DNA of 58,558 bases, counting the filler, from Dugesia japonica (lineage: Eukaryota): the NCBI GenBank assembly GCA_001938525.1. It is 5 parts of 5 records of this genome, joined end to end, with 100 filler letters (N's around TTAATTAATTAA, not from the genome) between each part and the next. Parts side by side here need not be neighbours in the genome. Positions count along the whole stretch, not along the records: positions 49,246 to 58,558 come from MQRL01610708.1; 4 more parts are not named here. One strand, given 5' to 3'. The first letter of the stretch is position 1. Every line of letters begins with the position of its first letter. The notes beneath the pieces are model-generated. The model saw only the letters and a program-made list of their open reading frames with translations, made no database searches and was not told the origin of the DNA. The position numbers and the translations under genes are program-made. Shown in pieces: positions 47,991 through 58,558 of the stretch.

Positions 47991-49499
47991 ACCTCCAAAC
48001 TTCTCTCTTCAAAAGATATTTCACTGATAATTTTTGCATTGCATCATTACTTGTGTTGAAAGTTGATTATTTTTAATTACAACAAATATTATGAAGATTA
48101 GTCCTTTAAATACTTCGAAAAAATGATGCTTCATCCGAAGAAGTCTATGGTCAACAGTGGGTGTTCTAAAAATAAATAGAGTTCTATCGACCAATTCATT
48201 TATAAACAACTAGAGAAACTCTACTTGTTCGTATTGTTTTACGAAGAAATATTGGAAAAACAAATGCTGAAAATATTGAGCTTCCCTTATTTAGACTTAA
48301 TATTTAAAAGACTTGATTTAATGGAAACATTTGTTTCGAAAACATGGTAGTATTCTTTTCATTGGCTTTTAATTAAAAAAGCAATCAATGTTCTTTTAAA
48401 GTCCATATTTATTTGCTTTTAAACTATTTTAGTGATGAAGTTAAAAATCATGAAGAATATAATATTTTTGTACTTCTAAATTGTAAAGAAATATATTTTT
48501 CATAGATTTTAGCTAATTGTTTTACATTAATGTTTTTAGATTTGTATTTTTAAATAATTCAAAGAATACTTAAGGAAAGTTATACTTGCTATCATTTTAA
48601 AAATATATATGAAAAATATTTCAATTGCATAAATTGCATGCTCAACCTCTGAACTTTCTATTATGATGATCATTATATTTTACCTTGTCTACAGTTTCAT
48701 TCAATTCAATTTTACAAGAGTGGCATTTTAAAATAAAGACAAACGAAAACACGCCAAACAATGTTCTATACAAATCAAACAACAATGAAATATTTGTTAA
48801 AACGAAAGAAAAAAATAATACTTTATTCATAAAGAAAAACTATTTAAAATAGTATTGATTAAAATTTAATATCAAAAAAACAAAATTCATAAAAAATTCT
48901 ATTAAATCAAAGCAAAATCTTTGTAACTTATTTTAATTATTTCATTATTTCATTAAGTAGTAATCAGAAACTTTCTTAACAGACAGTAAAATATAAAATT
49001 TTCTCTAACAGACTTTATATTATAATTATAATTAAAAAATGTGGTCACAATTATAACTAATTAGTGGACAATGTCTTCTTTTATGATTGATTATTTCATA
49101 ATTACTTTTGAAATGTTTGCAGCATTAATAAATACAAGATACAAANNNNNNNNNNNNNNNNNNNNNNNNNNNNNNNNNNNNNNNNNNNNTTAATTAATTA
49201 ANNNNNNNNNNNNNNNNNNNNNNNNNNNNNNNNNNNNNNNNNNNNCATCAAGGGTAAGGTCAACCGCAATAAACTGAAAACCTACCATAGGGACGGTAGG
49301 GTTAAATTCTTGAAAAGGGTCCCCTGAGGACTGTTTTTGAGCATGGTTTTTTTAATATAATCAAAATGGTAATTAAATTTATTTTATTATTACTTTCTGA
49401 TTTTAATATTAAGAATCATCTATTTTCTCGATAATAATAAACTAGATGTTCAAACACAATTTATTTATCATTGAAATAACACAGTNNNNNNNNNNNNNN

Positions 49500-50910
49500 N
49501 AAAAATACAAAGTAAATATTCTCATTTATTAAAAACTTTTTGAGTCTGTATCTTGCTTCTATATTACACGGATAAATATTGTTATCCTCATTTTTCATCT
49601 TTTTCAATAGTCGGAATCCAAAAATTTTTTTGTAATTCTATTCCTTCTATTAAATTTGGCTGTACCCATTTTACCACAATAAATTTAACTTCTTTGCATT
49701 GATTTCCAAATTTTATTTCTACTTTTATCGTATCTACAATTTCAAGTGCACTGTTATTGGCAAATCTTAAATTATCTTCACCTTTTATTATATTGACTTC
49801 TCTTTCAAAAATATTCAAGCTCGCAACATTGACTCTTTCTACTTATTCTTTGAATCCCAACCGTTACACTTGGTATACTTTGCATCCTGTCAAAGTTTAT
49901 ATCTTGCTGCTTTATTTCTTCTATCGCCAAGATTTCATTACCATGTTTTTTATCATTTTTATCATTTATCATCTCTGGTTTGCTTTCAATCATTCTTTTC
50001 TTAATAAACTTGTAAACCTTTTCTTTAGAACTCATCTACTCTCTTGTCTTCCTTTCTTTCATTTATATTATTATCTACACTATTTTTTACTATAATTAAG
50101 AATATTTTAATTTTTTGTGATACTTAATTCAACACCCCGGAGCTTTGCCATTTGGGTATTCCTCCTTATACATATTCGCTCCTTCCTTTTAACAGTATCA
50201 TTTATCGTCATTACATGTACAATCTCTTCCATTTTTCTCAATTGTATTAGCATGACTTCCTTTTCTTCTTGTGTCGTTATTTGTATTAATTGGATAATAT
50301 CTTTGTTGGTCATTTTCGAATTATTTTTTGACATGTTCACTCTTATTCTGATAATTAAACTGCGTGCTCGTATTTGTGTAACAGTCTTCTACGTGGTGTC
50401 ATTTTTATTGTATCTTGAGCAACTAACTTTCTTAAGTGTTGTCAGACTCACAAGCATAGAAAGTTTTTAGCTTTCTAGACAACTTTTGTCTAAATGATAT
50501 ATTTTGTTACAGATTCAACATGTGATGTATCATCTTCTGTTGTTGCTGTTCTGCTATATCTCTTCATTAAAGCTCTTGATAAAGTTTATTTGTTCTGGAC
50601 TTCAGTGGACTGCATCTCTTTAGTTACGAACTACATTTATTTCTTAAATTTTTACTTAGACNNNNNNNNNNNNNNNNNNNNNNNNNNNNNNNNNNNNNNN
50701 NNNNNNNNNNNNNNNNNNCTTGACTTGATCTTATGTTTTATCTTTCTGTCATTAAAACTATTCATAATTAAATCCTTTGTTAAATCTTCTATGTTCGATT
50801 TGTAAGTTAATAACTTTTCTACCATTCCTTATATCGTCTTCCTATAGATGCTCACATAATCTCCATTCCTTCGATAATTTAGAGCTTCCTCCAAATTTTT
50901 AAGCATTGAC
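49500..50910 (-). pseudogene. Degenerate gypsy gag/protease fragment
   Basis: NLRFANNSALEIVDTIKVEIKFG..VKFIVVKWVQPNLIEGIELQKNF parallels the element B protease C-half. Confidence 0.65.
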
Positions 50911-50937
50911 GCAGGCTTGAAGAAAAAAAAATATAAA

Positions 50938-51180
50938 AATATTTTAATGTAGCATATTTTTAGTGTAAAATATGTGAAGTAATATTTTAATGTGACATAT
51001 TTTAGTGTAATATTTTTAGTGTAATATTTTAATGTGACATATTTTAGTGTAATATTTTTAGTGTAATATTTTTAGTGTAATATTTTAATGTGACATATTT
51101 TAGTGTAATATTTTAATGCGAAATATTTATGAAAAAAATGTAACACGAAACATGTGACATATATTTTGTGTGATAAAATA
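50938..51180. repeat. Tandem 13-15 bp repeats (AATATTTTAATGTGACATATTTTAGTGT) upstream of the pPolB module
   Basis: More than 12 units read directly. Confidence 0.8.
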
Positions 51181-51243
51181 TTCACGCATTAAAGAGGAAT
51201 ATTATAAAAATATATTTAAGAGGTTAAATTATTCCTTTAGAAA

Positions 51244-51561
51244 ATGAGTGATACAAACAAATGTAATAATTGTAATAAAAAGTTTAAGAGTTTAGCTGGG
51301 TTTAAAGCCCATGTTAGATTTAGAATATGTTATAGAGTAAATGAAGAATTTCAATGTGAAACATGTCGTAAAAAATTCAATTCAGAAAATGGTTTACAAG
51401 AACATTTAAATGTAACAAGATGCGGTAATCCAGTGATTGTACCATTATTCTGCGAAATTTGTAATAAAATATTTCAAAGACAAAATCACGCAAGAACACA
51501 TTATAATTCTGACAGACATAAAAAATGGTACGTAATGGTAATCAATCAGGTGGAGAAGTAA
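51244..51561 (+). CDS. Three C2H2/C2HC zinc fingers (probably the N-terminus of the pPolB ORF)
   Basis: CNNCNKKF..H, CETCRKKF..H, CEICNKIF..HARTHYNSDRH. Confidence 0.75.
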   Translation: MSDTNKCNNCNKKFKSLAGFKAHVRFRICYRVNEEFQCETCRKKFNSENGLQEHLNVTRCGNPVIVPLFCEICNKIFQRQNHARTHYNSDRHKKWYVMVINQVEK

Positions 51562-51844
51562 TTAATTCTAAATAAGAAATTAGAGAATTATTAAAAGAAT
51601 ATGAAGATTATGAAATTGAAAATTTTAAAGAGAGTAAAGTGGAAATGAAATTAAATGTAGATGAAATATATGAAACAGTTACTAATATTTATATATTTCA
51701 AAAGGAAGTAGAAGAAATTGTTACAAAATATTTTAAATATGGAAAAAAGATTCTTATAAGTATGAAAGTTAAATGCAGATATGAAAAAGAAATAAATAAT
51801 GAACAAATAAATAAATAAATAAATAATTATCCAACATTAAATTC

Positions 51845-54318
51845 TTTCAACTTAAGACCGAAAAAAGCTCACTTTCCATATGAATATGTGAAAGGAAATA
51901 ATATAACAGAAGTTGAAGAATTATTAAAATCAAACCGAACACCAACCAAAAAAGATTTCTTCAACACACTAACCCAAAAAGAAATATCTGATGAAAATTA
52001 TGCGTCATTTCTAATTGACTTTCGCGGATATAAAAATATGTGGTGTTACATGTTACACTATATGAAGTTAGATGTTTTAATTCTAGCAGATTTTTTAGAA
52101 AACTTTAGAGATTCATGTTTAAATAATATTCTTAAATTGGATCCAAGTTATTCATATTCGGCTCCAGGTTACGCATGGGATACAGGAATATTAAATGCTA
52201 ATGTAAAACTTAAATATGCCAAAGCTGAAACATATGATCTTTTCTTAACAATTGAAGATGGAATTAGAGGTGGATATTCTGTAGTTTTAGGCAATAGACA
52301 AGTATTTAGTTATAATAAATATAAAGATCCATATATTAGACAACTAAATAAAGCANAGTTTGAAGATTTAATAAAAATTATGAATTCAGGACAAGAAATT
52401 CCAGATCATTATTATGAAGATGCATTTATTAAATATTTAGATGAAAATAGTCTTTATGCAAGTTGTATGACTAAACCATTACCAACAAGTGAAATGAGCG
52501 AGTGTGAAAATTTAGCATATGAAATGTCAAATGATAACACTAATTATATTTATGAAGTTGATTTAGATTACCCACGAGAAATACATGATAAAACTAAATA
52601 TTTTCCATNNNNNNNNNNNNNNNNNNNNNNNNNNNNNNNNNNNNNNNNNNNNNNNNNNTAATTATCAAAAAAGTTTTAATAAGAAAATTGGAAAGGAAAA
52701 TATTAAACTCACATTAAATCATTTTAATAAGAAAAATTATGTTGTACTTGGATCAACATTAGATTTATATCTTCAATTAGGAATGAAATTAACAAAAGTA
52801 CATAAGAAAATTAAAATGCCAACATCTCCATAGTTTAAAAATCATGTTCACAAATTAGTGGCTTTAAGAAAAGAATCTAAAAGAATTAAAGATGTCTTTG
52901 GTGATTACATTTACAAATTAATGTTAAATGAATTTTATGGAAAGACATTAGAAAATTTAAGAAATAGATGCAACATAGAAATTGTAGATAATGACAAAGA
53001 CTATCAAAATTTTGCAGCTAAAATAAATTTTAAATCAAGTAAAATCTTTACAATGAATGAAAGTAATGAAGCAAATGTCGCGGCAATGCAGATGATAAAA
53101 GGTCATTTAAAATATAATAAATTTCCATATATTGGATTCACTATTTTAGAATATGCAAAAGAAGTAATGTATAATTTTGTATATAATAAAATGGATCCAT
53201 TTATTGGAAATGGTAATTATAAAATTCATTACAGTGATAGTGTAACATCTGACACCCCAATAATACTACGGAAAAATAATAAAGTTATAATAAAAAAGAT
53301 TTCAGAAATAAATAAATCTTACAGAAAAAATATTTATGATGATAAATATTATTCTTATCCAGAAAATTATCAGATATGGACTAAAAGTGGATTTACTAAC
53401 TTAAACAAAGTAATTAAACATAGAACAAATAAAAAGATTTATAGAGTTAGAACTAAATTAGGAATTGTAGATGTTACACAAGATCATTCACTATTAAATG
53501 AATATGTTAAAGAAATAAAACCAACAGATGTAACATGTGAAACTAAATTATTACACAATAAAATATTTAATATTAAAGATAATAAATTTACATGTAGTTT
53601 TTTAAATAAAATATTTTCAGATAAAACATCTTTAGCTAAATCATATTTTTATGGAACATCTTTAGGAATGAATTTAATTATTACAAAAAATTTTAAATTA
53701 ATAGAACCAACAGAAGAAATTGAAACTAATGTGCAAAGTGTAACATTTTTAAGAGAAGGTGTTTAAGATGTTTATGATATTGAAACAAGTGACGGATCAT
53801 TTAACTGTGGATTTCCATTAATAATAAAAAATACTGATAGTATCTTTGTGGAGATAAAAAACAGATATAATTTAACAAAATTACAAACTTTACTAGGAGA
53901 TGATTTATTTCAGATGAAAGACGAAATGCATAATTCTGAAATAATTCAAGCTAATTTTATAAAAGCAAAATCTTATGGTTTTACTTATATTATCAATGAC
54001 CGCGAAGTATTTGATTTAAAAAATAAAGGTGTAAAGAAAAATAATAAATTGTTGATGAAAGATTTTGATGAAGTTTTAGATGATCCAAAGAAAAAGATTT
54101 ATGGAACAAATTTTTCATTAAGATCTAGCTTACATGAAATTGAAATTGTAGAACAAAATAAAATTGCATTAATGAGATATGATGATAAAAGAATTATTGA
54201 AGATGATGAAATAACAACTTGGGGACATGGAAGAGAATATGAATGTTCTTTCTGTAATCAATGGCTTTTAAAATTAGACATGATAAACAAAAATTTAACA
54301 TGTTCTCAATTTTTATAA
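51845..54318 (+). pseudogene. polB: Protein-primed family B DNA polymerase (pPolB), with intein; a few stops, one gap, N-terminal exonuclease part deleted
   Basis: KAHFPYEY; ExoIII YMKLDVLILAD; IRGGYS; motif A YLDENSLYASCM..PLP; motif B YKLMLNEFYGKT; motif C YSD//TDS; FIKAKSY; KNKGVKK; YDDKRII. Confidence 0.93.
53239..53832 (+). mobile_element. Mini-intein (198 codons) in pPolB motif C
   Basis: Block A SVTSDTPIILR; block B IVDVTQDHSLL (TxxH); block F DVYDIETSDGSF; block G IIKN followed by +1 Thr. In frame with both exteins; one TAA at 53764-53766. Confidence 0.93.
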
Positions 54319-54325
54319 ATAAGAA

Positions 54326-54820
54326 ATGAGCAACCCTACAGAAGAAGAATTAGAAAAGATAGTAAATTCAAAGAAATGTAAATCTGTAAAGATCAANNNN
54401 NNNNNNNNNNNNNNNNNNNNNNNNNNNNNNNNNNNNNNNNNNNNNNNNNNNNNNNNNNNNNNNNNNNNNNNNNNNNNNNNNNNNNNNNNAATTATTGGTG
54501 CGTTAGCTGGAACAGCAGGAATTGCACCTGGAATTGCATCTACAGTTAGTAATTCTAGAGATGCAATAAAAAAACAAAAAGAGATCGATGCTTTAGACAA
54601 AAAAGGTAGTGGTATTTATTTAAATCCATGGCAAGGAAATGCAATACATAAATATTTAAAAAATATAATTGAAGATCCTAACTTAAAAGATATTACTAAA
54701 AATATTAAAGATCGAATTGAAATAATTAAACAAGAAAATGGTATTTATTTAAATCCATGGAAAGGAAATAGTATTTATTTAAATCCTTATAGAAATAGAG
54801 ATGAATACGAAACAAATTGA
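54326..54820 (+). CDS. Polinton small virion core/membrane-active protein with GxGIYLNP(W/Y) repeats
   Basis: Hydrophobic Gly/Ala helix IIGALAGTAGIAPGIASTV, short coiled coil, three IYLNP(W/Y) motifs. Confidence 0.65.
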   Translation: MSNPTEEELEKIVNSKKCKSVKIXXXXXXXXXXXXXXXXXXXXXXXXXXXXXXXXIIGALAGTAGIAPGIASTVSNSRDAIKKQKEIDALDKKGSGIYLNPWQGNAIHKYLKNIIEDPNLKDITKNIKDRIEIIKQENGIYLNPWKGNSIYLNPYRNRDEYETN

Positions 54821-55665
54821 AAATAGAATTAAAAGCTTTAATAAAAGGTCAAAAGAAATATAATGATTTTTTCTGTGGTAATGTTGTTGATTCAAGAGAA
54901 TTACAAAGTGAATTAATTATCATACAAAAACCAACAATTTTAGCAATAGAAAAATCTAAACTGATAGAACCAACAATAATGGAATCAAGAGACTTAACAA
55001 AATTCTTTTTAAATGAAAAAGTAATTCCATTTATTCCTGAATACTCAATTAAAAATATTGATGACACTGGAAAATTAACTCAAACAATTATTCCTAAGTT
55101 TTCTATATTAGATATTACCAGTGTTGATAAAATAAAAAGTTTTATGGAAATAACTTTAAAAGAAAATAAAATTTATTTATTTGAAGAAGAAAGAAATAAA
55201 AAATTCTTATTTAAATCGGAAGTTATTCCATACTCCGATGGAATATTTAGATTAATTTTAGGAAATCTAGATTCAACAGAAACACCTGAAGATATTGAGA
55301 CTTATTTAAAATTTATTGCTCCTATTCCAACAAATAGTGATTATATTAATAAATTAAAAACAAAATTTAGAAGGGTAGATATTGCTGCTGTAAAACCTAA
55401 AAGAGGAAAAAAAGAAAAAGTTATATTAAATAAACCTGTGCCATTAAGTGAAACAGAGAAATCAGAAACAGAATATTTAACAGAAGGTGATGGGTACAAT
55501 CCAATAAGTTTATTTGAAAAGTTAACATTATTAATTTCAGCTGTAAAATCTGGACATGATAATCTCTCTGAAGAAATTAAAANNNNNNGTAAAAAATTAA
55601 AGATGATGGGTTTAATATCTAACAAGATTTATGATAAATATAAAATGAAATATTTTAAATCATAA
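54817..55665 (+). CDS. Polinton conserved hypothetical protein
   Basis: C-terminal NPISLFEKLTLLISAVKSGHDNLSEEI..KLKMMGLI resembles the recurrent Polinton motif DPNELVDRLRLLIASKxAGN..EI..IxxELxExGII. Confidence 0.6.
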   Translation: MKIELKALIKGQKKYNDFFCGNVVDSRELQSELIIIQKPTILAIEKSKLIEPTIMESRDLTKFFLNEKVIPFIPEYSIKNIDDTGKLTQTIIPKFSILDITSVDKIKSFMEITLKENKIYLFEEERNKKFLFKSEVIPYSDGIFRLILGNLDSTETPEDIETYLKFIAPIPTNSDYINKLKTKFRRVDIAAVKPKRGKKEKVILNKPVPLSETEKSETEYLTEGDGYNPISLFEKLTLLISAVKSGHDNLSEEIKXXXKKLKMMGLISNKIYDKYKMKYFKS

Positions 55666-55709
55666 GTGCTTACGAAGATGTTAACATTTAACATTTTTCA
55701 CTTTACACA

Positions 55710-55779
55710 AAACATGAAACATTTTACATGAAATATTTTACATGAAACATTTTACATGAAACATTTTACATGAAACATT
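55710..55779. repeat. 14 bp tandem repeat (ACATGAAACATTTT) x5
   Basis: Read directly; interrupted by the LTR at 55780. Confidence 0.85.
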
Positions 55780-55950
55780 TGTTGGGGTTCTACCTGAGTT
55801 TGGAAAAGTNNNNNNNNNNNNNNNNNNNNNNNNNNNNNNNNNNNNNNNNNNNNNNNNNNNNNNNNNNNNNNNNNNNNNNCAGTTTACCGCGGTTGACCTT
55901 ACTCTCGATGGAAGGTACACGCCAGTAAACCTTTGACTTCGGGTTCTACA
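55780..55950 (-). repeat. Probable 3' LTR of retroelement D with upstream polypurine tract
   Basis: Minus strand: AGGGAAAGTA|TGTAGAACCC...GTAGAACCCCAACA (TG...CA termini). Confidence 0.6.
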
Positions 55951-56027
55951 TACTTTCCCTATTATTATTTAAGAAAATTAATAAATCCACTACAATTCTA
56001 ACTAAAAAATTTATTAGTAATAATACA

Positions 56028-56400
56028 TTAGATTAGATCTAAAGCTTCCGGATCTAACCATTGATCAGGAGTGGTGATGATAAGGTTAAAGGCCGCGATG
56101 TCATCATCGTCATCCCACTGGGTGGTGTTTGGGTTACCAAGTTGACGCGATAGATCGGCGATGTACTGCTTCAGGAAGTCGATCTTCCGCTGCAGTAGCT
56201 GCTTCGTTTCGTTTTCTAACGCCTTGGTCTGGGTAGCCAGGTCATTTTGTTTTTTGACAATAACATCTAATTTTTTTATTAGTAGATCTCGTTGTGCCAG
56301 ATGTTTTAGTAGGGCACGGTCGGCATTACGTTTTAGGTGACGTTCCAGGAGGAGGCGACGCATAATGCTATGGCATCGACGCAAACTGTTTGGAAATTGT
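56028..56400 (-). CDS. Orphan coiled-coil protein with acidic tail
   Basis: Open, GC-rich frame MRRLLLERHLKR..LENETKQLLQRKIDFLKQYIADLSRQL..WDDDDD; start uncertain. Confidence 0.5.
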
Positions 56401-56538
56401 ATACGAGGCACTAAAATTAAAATGAACATCAACTCAGGAAAATTTCTAATAGTAAATCTTATACAATTACTAACAACTATTAAAAGATTCAAAGACAAAT
56501 CATTTCAAGATATCAAATTTTATTCACAGAGTGACCAA

Positions 56539-56831
56539 TCAATGACTGCGGGGCGTTTGTGTACCTTTATCTACCATCAAAGGTTCCAATGGCATAGTCG
56601 CCTTTAGTTTTAGGATGTCATTTATCACTTTATTTCGCGGTCTTGATAGGACCGGATCATCTCCGTTAAGGACTCCACCTGGCTCTTCCATACCCGCTCC
56701 TGAGTATGGGAGGCCTCCATTTCTTTCCGGTGAGCCACACACTTCTTTCGGTATCGACTCACCTTACTATTAGCATTGGCAGTATCGGCTTTCCACTTAC
56801 GTTTTGATAGTCGATACAAATCCCAAGTCAT
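56539..56831 (-). pseudogene. Small orphan ORF(s), probably frameshifted
   Basis: Two overlapping GC-rich ORFs (56625-56831 and 56539-56742). Confidence 0.35.
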
Positions 56832-57152
56832 TTCACGATCTTCGCTATCCTCACGTATCTTTTATGTGGGTGCCGAACTATGATTCAATGAAGAGTGCAC
56901 TAAAAGTTACATAATCAAATATAGAATATTAGACACTAAAAGTCAATTCGAATGATTCCTTTATAGATAGTTTATTAAAATTGTAGAAAGTGTTCTACTT
57001 GGCCAGAAACAAGTTAACGAGATTATAACACAATTATATTATACACAAAAAATTTTATTTAAGCAATGTAAAATTATAGGAATTGTAAAGACAAGTTAAG
57101 TAGGGGAGGTAGTGTTTTCATCCGAACCCCCACTGGCCTGGTTTCGTAAATT

Positions 57153-57500
57153 CTAGAGATTATTGCCTAAATCCATCGAGAAGCTGGTGCTCTGAGATAG
57201 GTGTCCCAGTGGCACTGGAAGTAAGGAGGGCCCCTCTTGCCAATGGATAGTAACCTGATTGGTTACCGGGTCAACCGTCGTGACTCGATGTAGAACCTCA
57301 CGGCCACGATCGGGACCAGCCCATTCATAATAAGCCCGGCGCTCTCCGGCCGCCCATTCTCTCTCGTTTTCGGCGTCCTCCGGTGATAAATTTGAATAAT
57401 CCACCATGATGCCGGCAGTGCGGTCATGTGGGTTACGATAACGTTTGAAGACGGTCCGTCTGGTATACCGATCCCACAATACTTCCCATTTAAAATCCAT
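57153..57500 (-). CDS. Orphan 115 aa protein
   Basis: ATG-started, intact ORF, markedly GC-richer than its AT-rich flanks, with AATAAA downstream at about 57055. Confidence 0.55.
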   Translation of the reverse strand: MDFKWEVLWDRYTRRTVFKRYRNPHDRTAGIMVDYSNLSPEDAENEREWAAGERRAYYEWAGPDRGREVLHRVTTVDPVTNQVTIHWQEGPSLLPVPLGHLSQSTSFSMDLGNNL

Positions 57501-58558
57501 TTCTAAATTCTATAATAAATAGTCGATTAAGCCAGACCACAAAACAACAACATAGATAGTAAAAGAAACACTTAATTAACATTCAATTTGTTTTATTTAT
57601 GATAAGTAAACACGAGTAATAGAACGCAGTTTAATTAATAAGACCGCTGATTAAATTCACGCGACCGGAAACTCGATCGAAAGAGTGGAGCTACTCTTCA
57701 TCCAAGTCCACCCGATGTTCCAGGGGGAACATCTCAACGAAACATTGTAAATCAGTTTCGTCGGGGTGTTCGATGGTGCCGATGGTGAGCCAATAATTGT
57801 CGCTTCCGTGATCTACGTCTTTCCCACCGAATCACTTTCAGCACTTTGGAAAACTGATCAACCATGCGCTAGGACATCTATAAACAAAAATTACAAGATT
57901 GGTGTGTAGATAACCCATACAATCTGAGCACAATTGATACTTAATAATGTAGGGGTAGGTTCCCGGCTTGCCCGTGATTTATATCTAGCAGTCAAAGCTA
58001 AAAGAGACTACCTAGAACTGGANTCTTCCCTAGTTTGATCCTTTCTCTTCGAATCACTCAACTGGTAGAATGAAATTAATCTGGTATGTGTCAAAAACCT
58101 GATTCTCATTTTTGTACTTTTACTTAGTTCATTTTCTCCATTTATAGCGCATTGATACGGGGCGTATTGCTGTCTACTATAATCACTATGGAATGAACTT
58201 GGAAAGTAATCGATCATATTATTAACTAATAATATTATTCACCCGATAATATCGGTGATTCTAACATCACAGTTGTCGGATCGTTTTTTGGGGCTCAATN
58301 GTAGCTATTTTTCTCAATTTACCACTGCTACATTTCTACCAGTGTTGATTAAATGAAATAGGTGTAGATCGAAAAATACTATATTTTTACGTTTTACGGT
58401 ATTCATACTTTTGTTTCGTTTATTATGGCGGATTACTGTTCTGTGATTTCAAAAAGGAACAAATTAAGTTGTTTAATTATTGGCTTGAGTTTAGGAGGAC
58501 AATTTAAGCCCTTAAATGAATTTCAGAATAAAGAACGGTAATACTTATATTTAGAAAT

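What the first reader, a model, noticed from the sequence alone, without database searches (positions are those of the whole stretch)
53239..53832. Intein inside the catalytic motif C of a Polinton protein-primed DNA polymerase in an animal genome
Seen: pPolB reads KIHYSD, then a 594-nt in-frame insertion, then TDSIFVE. Removing the insertion restores YSDTDS. The insertion has all splicing blocks: Ser1 (SVTSDTP), TxxH (VTQDH), VYDIET, terminal Asn and +1 Thr. Established: YGD|TDS is the pol-c intein site of archaeal PolB and of giant-virus PolB such as Mimivirus, and inteins are considered essentially absent from animal nuclear genes. Inference: an NCLDV-type intein moved into a protein-primed polymerase of a Polinton/adintovirus, perhaps during co-infection, and was endogenised. 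I know of no described case but cannot search. This copy has one stop (53764), so it is probably dead.
Basis: partly seen in the sequence, partly recalled or inferred. Interest (0 to 1): 0.95.

Follow-up and report, generated by a model that had tools for sequence, protein, structure and literature searches.

The report
Decayed intein in protein-primed polymerase gene
A self-splicing protein insert (intein) of the type known from giant-virus DNA polymerases sits in the catalytic motif of a broken protein-primed DNA polymerase gene on a small AT-rich insert in a eukaryotic genome, a host-protein class where inteins seem undescribed; this copy is dead.

Summary
Window 53239-53832 is a 594-nt in-frame insertion between the Asp and Thr of polymerase motif C (..KIHYSD | TDSIFVE..). 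It starts with Ser, has TxxH, and ends Lys-Asn before Thr.

It is a real intein. The ORF holding it finds 2778 proteins, best E 1e-38. NCBIfam intein_Nterm scores above its cut-off. The predicted fold matches almost only solved inteins. In 117 of 144 aligned relatives the intein follows YGD in classical family-B polymerases, and the named matches are giant-virus polymerases.

The host gene is a protein-primed PolB (PF03175 family, usually with an Endonuclease-VII-like domain). Named members come from coral, mite and mussel genomes. None of its 119 best relatives carries the intein, and the closest show the uninterrupted motif. Five other public fragments do carry it at the same site.

"Polinton" is not shown. 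The AT-rich block is about 4.85 kb, and no integrase, capsid, ATPase or protease gene was found. "Animal genome" could not be tested for this window.

The gene is a pseudogene: it has in-frame stops, one frame change at a masked run, and no N-terminal half.

Verdict: a new extein class for a known intein type. Moderately interesting.

The parts
53239..53832 (+). Mini-intein (198 codons) of the pol-c type. Ser1, TxxH, VYDIET block, Lys-Asn C-terminus, +1 Thr. No homing-endonuclease domain. Broken by one in-frame stop.
   Evidence: sequence. (E down to 1e-38). (both junction blocks match relatives). (TIGR01445, 39.2 bits against a cut-off of 24.5). (Hint fold; giant-virus polymerase inteins).
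51621..54318 (+). Remnant of a protein-primed family-B DNA polymerase gene (the extein), covering only the C-terminal ~600 residues of ~1150-1250-residue relatives. Pseudogene: 1-2 in-frame stops in the exteins, 1 in the intein, one frame change that coincides with a masked run, and the N-terminal half absent.
   Evidence: PF03175: E 1e-5 and 1.5e-3, just under the cut-off. (tblastn with P0156, P0160, P0161 and P0277: best E 1e-99, 2 frames, outer bounds 51621/51807 to 54234). (counts).
51244..51561 (+). ORF with three zf-met/JAZ-type C2H2 zinc fingers. Probably the N-terminal remnant of the polymerase polyprotein, or a separate small gene.
   Evidence: PF12874, E 3e-17; relatives have a zf-met finger at the N-terminus of the pPolB (P0161) or in the gene just upstream (L004). 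Direct similarity is weak.
54326..54820 (+). ORF of unknown function, with a Gly/Ala-rich hydrophobic stretch and three copies of a G-x-G-IYLNPW-x-GN motif. Partly masked.
   Evidence: No family match.
54817..55665 (+). ORF of unknown function, 282 codons.
   Evidence: No Pfam or PHROG match. No homologue. AlphaFold2 pLDDT 33.
50938..51128 (.). Left border array of 14-nt tandem repeats (42-nt super-unit) at the edge of the AT-rich block.
55712..55780 (.). Right border array of 14-nt tandem repeats, about 70% like the left array in inverted orientation. GC rises from 23.5% to 39% just beyond it.

Best explanation
What it is. The insertion is a degenerate class-1 mini-intein of the pol-c allele type. 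It lies between the catalytic Asp and the Thr of motif C of a protein-primed family-B DNA polymerase (pPolB). The polymerase gene is itself a decayed, N-terminally truncated copy. It lies on a ~4.85-kb AT-rich block that appears to be integrated in a eukaryotic genome.

How it would work in an intact copy (inferred from the established mechanism of class-1 inteins):
1. Ser1 makes an N-O acyl shift.
2. The +1 Thr attacks the resulting ester.
3. The terminal Asn cyclises and releases the intein.
4. An O-N shift restores the Y-x-D-T-D-S active-site motif.
The polymerase would therefore become active only after splicing.

Mobility. Relatives in other pPolBs keep a LAGLIDADG-like segment. The lineage therefore probably spreads by endonuclease-mediated homing into intein-free alleles. 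The window's intein has no endonuclease domain, so it could only be inherited together with its element.

Origin. The intein belongs to a very large family that lives mainly in giant-virus-type PolB, and also in topoisomerase-like genes. The likeliest origin is an ectopic jump into pPolB, made possible by the shared motif-C context. Direction, donor and date are inferred, not shown.
For: Sequence:
- The blocks and junctions were read directly.

Homology:
- Best E is 1e-38, with 800 hits at E<=1e-10.
- All 144 aligned relatives start with Ser, and 117 of them follow YGD.
- The stretch downstream of the stop matches the relatives' VYD(I/L)ET..G.G..(K/H)N|TDS block. Penultimate Lys is shared by 23 relatives.
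- The hosts of these relatives are PF00136 polymerases, several with Intein_splicing, LAGLIDADG or Hom_end hits.

Curated model and fold:
- TIGR01445 intein_Nterm scores 39.2 bits against a cut-off of 24.5.
- The AlphaFold2 model of the upstream piece has mean pLDDT 81.7. The 36 best PDB matches are all inteins, including NeqN (TM 0.72 over the target).
- BFVD names polymerases of Pithovirus, Marseillevirus, Megavirus, Klosneuvirus, a phycodnavirus, Heterosigma akashiwo virus and Pandoravirus.
- YGD|TDS is the pol-c allele position (position III), also the site of the N. equitans split intein (Ogata 2005, PMC549080). NEQ068 is the best PDB sequence hit.

Extein:
- It belongs to the PF03175 family: tblastn best E 1e-99 with P0156, and 501 relatives at E<=1e-10.
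- None of the 119 best extein relatives has an intein-like segment, and 87 show an uninterrupted [YF]xDTDS.

Other carriers:
- P0014, P0052, P0054, P0279 and P0280 carry the intein at the same site.
- P0052 and the intein-free P0197 have exteins 88% identical.

Decay:
-.
Against: - Pfam Intein_splicing reaches only E 0.15 on this copy.
- No curated C-terminal intein model matches the short downstream piece, though its close relatives P0078 and P0103 do not match one either.
- The penultimate residue is Lys, not the usual His.
- Fold TM-scores are modest (0.3-0.45), because the model lacks the last strands and has extra helices.
- Splicing has never been shown for any member of this pPolB-hosted group.
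- Integration in the host genome rests on one assembly, and there is a masked run next to the right border.
- The origin from giant viruses rests on which exteins dominate the hit list. The resampled nearest neighbour is unresolved: YGD 77, Toprim-like 61, other 32, pPolB 30 of 200.
Confidence: 0.85

Rival explanations
1. The AT-rich block is not part of the host chromosome. On this reading it is a free small linear plasmid- or virus-like replicon, or DNA of a symbiont or prey organism, joined to host sequence by mis-assembly. The 'endogenised' part of the story would then be an artefact.
For: - GC steps abruptly from 23.5% in the block to 29% on the left and 39% on the right.
- A masked run lies directly beside the right border.
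- Both borders carry repeat arrays of the kind expected at the ends of a linear replicon.
- The closest extein relatives lie on 3.6-4.4-kb metagenome contigs.
Against: - The polymerase gene is heavily decayed and lacks its N-terminal half. That is typical of a dead integrated copy, not of a replicating element.
- The family occurs many times on Mb-scale contigs and in annotated animal genomes.
- A second degraded intein-bearing copy lies next to a LINE-like reverse transcriptase ORF (L001).
Confidence: 0.15
2. The intein is old in this pPolB family. On this reading it was inherited vertically or exchanged only among pPolBs and was lost from most lineages. It was not acquired recently from a giant-virus polymerase.
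For: - Intein-bearing pPolBs occur in at least three diverged sublineages: the window; P0279/P0280/P0052; and P0014.
- Their inteins are about as diverged from each other (48-54%, with 68% within one sublineage) as from any other relative.
- A LAGLIDADG-like segment in P0280, P0279 and L001 would allow homing within the family.
Against: - None of the 119 best family members carries the intein.
- pPolB-hosted inteins are not each other's nearest neighbours.
- The intein family is far more numerous in PF00136 polymerases (117 of 144).
- Third-position GC of the insertion is lower than that of the exteins (15/198 against 46/288, p 0.008), a weak sign of a different history.
Confidence: 0.3
3. The copy is alive. 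On this reading the in-frame stop is a sequencing error or is read through, and the element makes a polymerase that matures by splicing.
For: - All splicing residues are in place, and the frame is kept across both junctions.
- The ORFs downstream are open.
Against: - The exteins carry further in-frame stops, and the N-terminal ~530-630 residues of the protein are absent from the whole piece.
- Gene ends use TAA followed closely by the next start, so a code that reads TAA as sense is unlikely.
Confidence: 0.03
4. The insertion is not an intein. On this reading it is another in-frame insert, such as a nuclease domain of the kind described in Polinton pPolBs, a transposon fragment, or an unspliced intron.
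For: - Pfam's intein model is below threshold on this copy.
- HNH and VSR nuclease insertions are known in Polinton pPolB2 (PMC10748475).
Against: - The homology, curated-model and fold evidence all point to inteins.
- Both junction blocks fit the relatives' junctions residue for residue.
Confidence: 0.01

Closest known systems
pol-c allele inteins of giant-virus (Nucleocytoviricota) family-B DNA polymerases, e.g. the Mimivirus PolB intein (Ogata et al. 2005, PMC549080)
   Same: - Same insertion point between Asp and Thr of the Y-x-D|T-D-S motif.
- Same blocks, with 37-56% identity over the N-terminal splicing region.
- Many relatives are mini-inteins of about 200 residues, and a Lys-Asn C-terminus is shared by a subgroup.
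   Different: - The extein here is a protein-primed PolB (PF03175), which shares little beyond the catalytic motifs with PF00136 polymerases.
- The copy lies in a small decayed block in a cellular genome and is broken.
Archaeal PolB pol-c inteins, including the Nanoarchaeum equitans split intein (NEQ068/NEQ528)
   Same: Same position III. NEQ068 is the best PDB sequence match (E 0.04 with the single sequence, 4.8e-6 with the profile) and a good structural match.
   Different: Much lower similarity than to the metagenomic and giant-virus relatives. The archaeal host polymerases are RNA-primed.
Nuclease-domain insertions in Polinton pPolB2 (HNH in nematode/oomycete, VSR in marine nematode/mollusc; Jeong et al. 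2023, PMC10748475), read by Krupovic et al. 2024 (PMC11071308) as possible traces of intein invasion
   Same: Selfish-element-like insertions inside the pPolB of eukaryotic virus-like elements. The extein family here also carries an HNH-superfamily (Endonuclease_7) domain.
   Different: Those insertions are nuclease domains with no Hint splicing domain described (the word 'intein' does not occur in that paper). Here the splicing domain is present and the endonuclease is absent.
Nuclear inteins of fungi and protists (VMA1, Prp8; Anaeramoeba)
   Same: Inteins encoded in eukaryotic nuclear DNA.
   Different: Those sit in live cellular genes and splice. This one sits in a dead copy of a mobile element's polymerase. 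Green et al. 2018 state that inteins are absent from metazoan genomes.

Membership tests
Intein (class 1, Hint fold) | Nucleophilic Ser/Cys as first residue (block A) | tested here: met
   Ser at 53239-53241. All 144 aligned relatives start with Ser, in an SVTxDTP-like block.
Intein (class 1, Hint fold) | Block B TxxH | tested here: met
   VTQDH is present. T80, D82 and H83 are at least 90% conserved in alignment A1.
Intein (class 1, Hint fold) | C-terminal blocks F/G ending in Asn, followed by Ser/Thr/Cys; penultimate His usual | tested here: met
   VYDIET....Lys-Asn|Thr matches the relatives' block. The penultimate residue is Lys instead of His, as in 23 relatives (74 have His).
Intein (class 1, Hint fold) | Match to curated intein profiles | tested here: inconclusive
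   NCBIfam TIGR01445 intein_Nterm scores 39.2 bits against a cut-off of 24.5, so it is met. Pfam PF14890 reaches only E 0.15, below its cut-off. No C-terminal model matches.
Intein (class 1, Hint fold) | Hint fold | tested here: met
   The model of the piece upstream of the stop has pLDDT 81.7. PDB ranks 1-36 are all inteins at probability up to 1.00. TM-scores are only 0.3-0.45 because the model is incomplete.
Intein (class 1, Hint fold) | In-frame insertion in a conserved host motif, absent from homologues | tested here: met
   P0156, P0160, P0161 and P0162 have the uninterrupted motif. None of the 119 best relatives carries the insert.
Intein (class 1, Hint fold) | Open reading frame and protein splicing | tested here: not met
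   There is one in-frame stop inside the insertion, and the host gene is broken. Splicing itself is not testable with these tools.
pol-c allele of PolB inteins | Insertion between Asp and Thr of motif C (YxD|TDS) | tested here: met
   The junction reads HYSD|..|TDS. 117 of 144 relatives follow YGD| and 95 are followed by TDS. The definition of the site comes from PMC549080.
pol-c allele of PolB inteins | Closer to same-site inteins than to inteins at other sites or in other genes | tested here: inconclusive
   Same-site inteins dominate the hits. Inteins in Toprim-like exteins are equally similar over the first 100 residues.
pol-c allele of PolB inteins | Extein is an RNA/DNA-primed family-B polymerase (PF00136) | tested here: not met
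   The extein pieces match PF03175, and their relatives are PF03175 with or without PF02945.
LAGLIDADG homing-endonuclease inteins | Endonuclease domain between the splicing halves | tested here: not met
   The insertion is 198 codons with no LAGLIDADG hit. It aligns along its length with a 204-residue mini-intein (P0078). Relatives P0280, P0279 and L001 have a GFF(L/M)GDG(T/S)S segment. In P0280 the Pfam LAGLIDADG_3 hit is E 0.005, below the cut-off.
Protein-primed family-B DNA polymerase (PF03175) | Profile match and homology to family members | tested here: met
   The window's pieces score 25.1 bits (cut-off 25.8) and 17.9 bits. Homologues P0047, P0160-P0162 and P0230 score 59-78 bits. tblastn best E is 1e-99.
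Protein-primed family-B DNA polymerase (PF03175) | Complete exonuclease and polymerase domains; terminal-protein priming | tested here: not met
   Only the C-terminal ~600 of ~1150-1250 residues are present anywhere in the piece. Priming is not testable.
Polinton / Maverick (adintovirus-like) | Retrovirus-like integrase together with pPolB | tested here: not met
   No rve or other integrase match in any tested ORF of the piece.
Polinton / Maverick (adintovirus-like) | Double and single jelly-roll capsid proteins, packaging ATPase, maturation protease | tested here: not met
   No match was found. The two ORFs downstream of the polymerase are orphans. Divergent capsid genes could escape these searches.
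Polinton / Maverick (adintovirus-like) | 15-20 kb element with terminal inverted repeats and 6-bp target duplication | tested here: inconclusive
   The AT-rich block is about 4.85 kb, with repeat arrays at both borders that are only weakly alike in inverted orientation. Exact ends and a target duplication could not be defined. The piece is 9.3 kb, so a larger element cut by the piece edge cannot be excluded.
Polinton / Maverick (adintovirus-like) | Family members lie inside Polinton gene modules elsewhere | not tested
   Contexts of family members from named animal genomes were not fetched. The four contigs seen (L001-L004) are short and show no Polinton genes.

The most novel reading that the evidence does not exclude
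A living lineage of pol-c inteins, still armed with LAGLIDADG endonucleases, circulates among protein-primed polymerase genes of small virus-like or plasmid-like elements. These elements colonise animal (and perhaps protist) genomes. The lineage exchanges with the intein pool of giant-virus PolB and topoisomerase genes. If so, metazoan germline DNA does hold inteins. The pair P0052/P0197, with exteins 88% identical and one member intein-free, would then mark recent homing.
Probability: 0.35. Interest if true: 0.75.

Novelty: new variant of a known kind. Interest (0 to 1): 0.6.

Why it matters
- Intein alleles are thought to stay at one site of one gene family, because homing needs a long DNA target. 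Ogata et al. already found the archaeal-to-Mimivirus sharing of the pol-c site hard to explain. Finding the same allele type in protein-primed PolB extends that site fidelity across the deepest split of family B, where little but the six-residue motif is shared. It therefore speaks to how inteins reach new hosts.
- Reviews state that metazoan genomes lack inteins. The extein family has members in coral, mite and mussel genomes. A census could show whether that statement needs a footnote for endogenous virus-like elements.
- The element is a compact pPolB-bearing block, not an obvious Polinton. This hints at a poorly described class of small pPolB elements.
- The copy in this window is dead and has no functional consequence.

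Tried and rejected
Rejected hypotheses:
- Alternative genetic code (TAA as sense). Gene ends use TAA, closely followed by the next start.
- Organelle or structural-RNA context. No tRNA and no Rfam match was found.
- Bacterial-type promoter and terminator scan. The count was no higher than in shuffles.

Searches that found nothing:
- Pfam, PHROGs and NCBIfam on the two ORFs downstream of the polymerase and on the flank ORFs.
- Homologue search for ORF 54817-55665.
- Its single-sequence AlphaFold2 model was unusable (pLDDT 33), so no fold search was run.
- PDB sequence search with the extein pieces and with P0160.
- NCBIfam on the short piece downstream of the stop.

Analyses that fell short:
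It was replaced by identity ranking with column resampling, which leaves the nearest extein class unresolved.
- My impression that the left-flank minus-strand ORFs are retroelement gag/protease-like comes from memory and got no Pfam support.

Literature:
- No paper in the held library describes a Hint-type intein in a pPolB.
- Kapitonov & Jurka 2006 and two Krupovic & Koonin reviews are not held. I have an unverified memory that the 2006 paper mentions an intein in a protist Polinton polymerase. If that is true it lowers the novelty.
- The organisms behind assemblies GCA_043755215.1 and GCA_044232415.1 and analyses ERZ25067548 and ERZ5540423 could not be identified.

- My script printed the ends of ORFs that lie inside the broken gene.
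- fetched contigs of relatives of unknown host, before one search showed that the family occurs in animal genomes. None was fetched afterwards.
Full report
**1. The observation.**
The piece is 49246-58558. Translation of 53239-53832 gives 198 codons, in frame with what precedes (..Lys-Ile-His-Tyr-Ser-Asp) and what follows (Thr-Asp-Ser-Ile-Phe-Val-Glu..). The insertion begins Ser-Val-Thr-Ser-Asp-Thr-Pro, contains Val-Thr-Gln-Asp-His, and ends ..Val-Tyr-Asp-Ile-Glu-Thr....Lys-Asn. It holds one in-frame stop.

**2. Is it an intein?**
- First results were weak. Pfam gave only a faint Intein_splicing hit (E 0.15). The PDB sequence search gave weak hits to NEQ068, the N-part of the Nanoarchaeum equitans polymerase split intein, and to a phage PolB split intein.
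- The large search was decisive. The uninterrupted ORF that runs from the N-extein into the insertion found 2778 proteins at E<=1e-3, with a best E of 1e-38. Most alignments begin a few residues before the junction.
- All 144 relatives that could be aligned to the first residue start with Ser, in an SVTxDTP(I/L)(I/L) block. 117 of them follow Tyr-Gly-Asp.
- The short stretch downstream of the stop, read together with the start of the C-extein, matches the relatives' C-terminal block and their Asn|Thr-Asp-Ser junction. The unusual penultimate Lys is shared by 23 relatives, against 74 with His.
- NCBIfam's curated intein_Nterm model scores 39.2 bits against a cut-off of 24.5.
- An AlphaFold2 model of the piece upstream of the stop, built on an alignment of 26 relatives, has mean pLDDT 81.7. 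Its 36 best PDB matches are all inteins.
- In the viral structure library the best matches are DNA polymerases of Pithovirus, a phycodnavirus, Marseillevirus, Megavirus, Klosneuvirus, Heterosigma akashiwo virus and Pandoravirus, plus one iridovirus-like topoisomerase 2.
- Pfam on the top sequence hits shows PF00136 with its exonuclease domain, several with Intein_splicing, LAGLIDADG_3 or Hom_end.
- Ogata et al. define YGD|TDS as position III, the pol-c allele. It is shared by archaeal PolI, Mimivirus and the N. equitans split intein.
- At 198 codons the insertion is a mini-intein. Among 69 relatives with both junctions located, 32 are 250 residues or shorter. The insertion aligns over 163 residues with the 204-residue intein of P0078.

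**3. The extein.**
- The flanking pieces match PF03175 just below threshold. They are clearly homologous to PF03175 proteins: P0156 (777 aa) aligns at 42% identity, best E 1e-99.
- A search with P0156 found 501 relatives at E<=1e-10. Most are 1100-1300 residues, with an Endonuclease_7-like (HNH-superfamily) domain ahead of the polymerase. Many lie on Mb-scale contigs.
- The only organism names returned are Montipora foliosa, Tetranychus urticae and Mytilus galloprovincialis.
- None of the 119 best relatives contains an intein-like segment. 87 of them show an uninterrupted [YF]xDTDS. The closest relatives read ..KIHYSDTDSTF.. (P0156) and ..KIHFSDTDSIF.. (P0161).
- The 594 nt are therefore an insertion relative to the family norm, placed exactly at the Asp|Thr bond.

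**4. Other carriers.**
- Five further public fragments are pPolB-type on the extein side and carry the same intein at the same bond: P0014, P0052, P0054, P0279 and P0280.
- P0279, P0280 and the contig of P0014 (L001) continue into a GFF(L/M)GDG(T/S)S segment, which is LAGLIDADG-like. Pfam support is weak.
- Their exteins belong to sublineages other than the window's (34-40% identity).
- P0052's extein is 88% identical to intein-free P0197. This is a classical intein-plus/intein-minus pair.
- L001 is itself degraded and lies beside a LINE-like reverse-transcriptase ORF.

**5. Where did the intein come from?**
- Over its first 100 residues the window's intein is 50-56% identical to the best relatives of every extein class. 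In 200 column resamplings the nearest neighbour was YGD-type 77 times, Toprim-like 61, other 32 and pPolB-hosted 30.
- The family is overwhelmingly resident in giant-virus-type genes, which makes them the likely reservoir. Neither donor, direction nor date is shown.
- Third-position GC is lower in the insertion than in the exteins (15/198 against 46/288, p 0.008). This is a weak hint of a separate history.

**6. State of the copy.**
- Against full-length relatives, the window holds only the C-terminal ~600 residues. Nothing in the piece matches the N-terminal half.
- The aligned exteins contain one or two in-frame stops and the intein contains one. The reading frame changes once, at a masked run, so a true frameshift cannot be told from masking.
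- The gene is a pseudogene, and the intein cannot be made from it.

**7. The surrounding element.**
- The polymerase lies in a 23.5%-GC block of about 4.85 kb (roughly 50936-55780). The left flank has 29% GC and the right flank 39%.
- The block is bordered by arrays of 14-nt repeats that are weakly alike in inverted orientation.
- On the + strand it holds four ORFs in order: a three-finger zf-met ORF, the polymerase remnant, and two orphan ORFs.
- Relatives have a zf-met finger at the N-terminus of the polymerase, or in the gene just upstream of it.
- No integrase, capsid, ATPase or protease was found in the piece. 'Polinton' is therefore not supported by what can be seen. A compact pPolB element, or an internally deleted fragment of a larger one, fits better. 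The piece is short, and contexts of animal-genome relatives were not fetched.

**8. Literature.**
- Green et al. 2018 list eukaryotic inteins in fungal nuclear genes, algal plastids and large DNA viruses, and state that metazoan genomes lack them.
- Jeong et al. 2023 describe HNH and VSR nuclease insertions in Polinton pPolB2 and do not mention inteins.
- Krupovic et al. 2024 suggest that such insertions result from intein invasions.
- I found no description of a Hint-type intein in a pPolB. Kapitonov & Jurka 2006 could not be read.

**9. Verdict.**
- This is a real, degenerate pol-c-type mini-intein in a dead protein-primed polymerase gene.
- It is a known kind of element in a new class of host protein, and it is not a singleton.
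- The host organism and Polinton membership remain open.

Noticed in passing
window 50938-51128 and 55712-55780: Arrays of 14-nt tandem repeats lie exactly at the two borders of the 23.5%-GC block. They are about 70% alike in inverted orientation, and the best local match is not significant on its own. They may be the termini of a small linear replicon.
   Followed up: partly
window 49246-49276 and 55880-55910: A 31-nt inverted repeat (87% complementary). It is cut on one side by the piece edge and on the other by a masked run, so it may be much longer. It encloses the AT-rich block plus the left flank.
   Followed up: no
window 54326-54820: An ORF with a Gly/Ala-rich hydrophobic stretch and three copies of a G-x-G-IYLNPW-x-GN peptide motif (DNA repeats 54599-54786). 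No family match. Its end overlaps the start of the next ORF by 4 nt.
   Followed up: partly
window 54817-55665: An orphan ORF of 282 codons. No homologue was found among 5.8 billion clusters by the word-based search, and the AlphaFold2 model is unusable (pLDDT 33).
   Followed up: yes
proteins P0024, P0042, P0043, P0071, P0079 (..TDQD|S..); P0051, P0113, P0145 (..TEGD|S..); P0001, P0031, P0092 (..SAN|S..): The same Ser1 intein family also sits in other exteins. Some are Toprim-like motifs; BFVD names one DNA topoisomerase 2, and the motif reading is otherwise from memory. Others are at a second PolB site. Sequence similarity to the window's intein is equal to that of the pol-c-site members.
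   Followed up: partly
P0052 (L003) versus P0197: An intein-bearing and an intein-free pPolB whose exteins are 88% identical over 69 residues. This suggests recent gain or loss of the intein in that sublineage.
   Followed up: partly
L001:84-1557 and L001:7368-8010: A second degraded pPolB gene carries the intein, here with a LAGLIDADG-like segment. It lies on the same 8-kb contig as a LINE-like reverse-transcriptase ORF, so it is probably another endogenous copy in a eukaryotic genome.
   Followed up: partly
window 53239-53832 versus 52858-53238 and 53833-54315: Third-codon-position GC is 7.6% in the insertion against 16% in the exteins (Fisher p 0.008).
   Followed up: yes
window 49588-50825, minus strand: A run of short minus-strand ORFs in a T-rich stretch looked to me like a decayed retroelement gag/protease. 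Pfam gave no support.
   Followed up: partly
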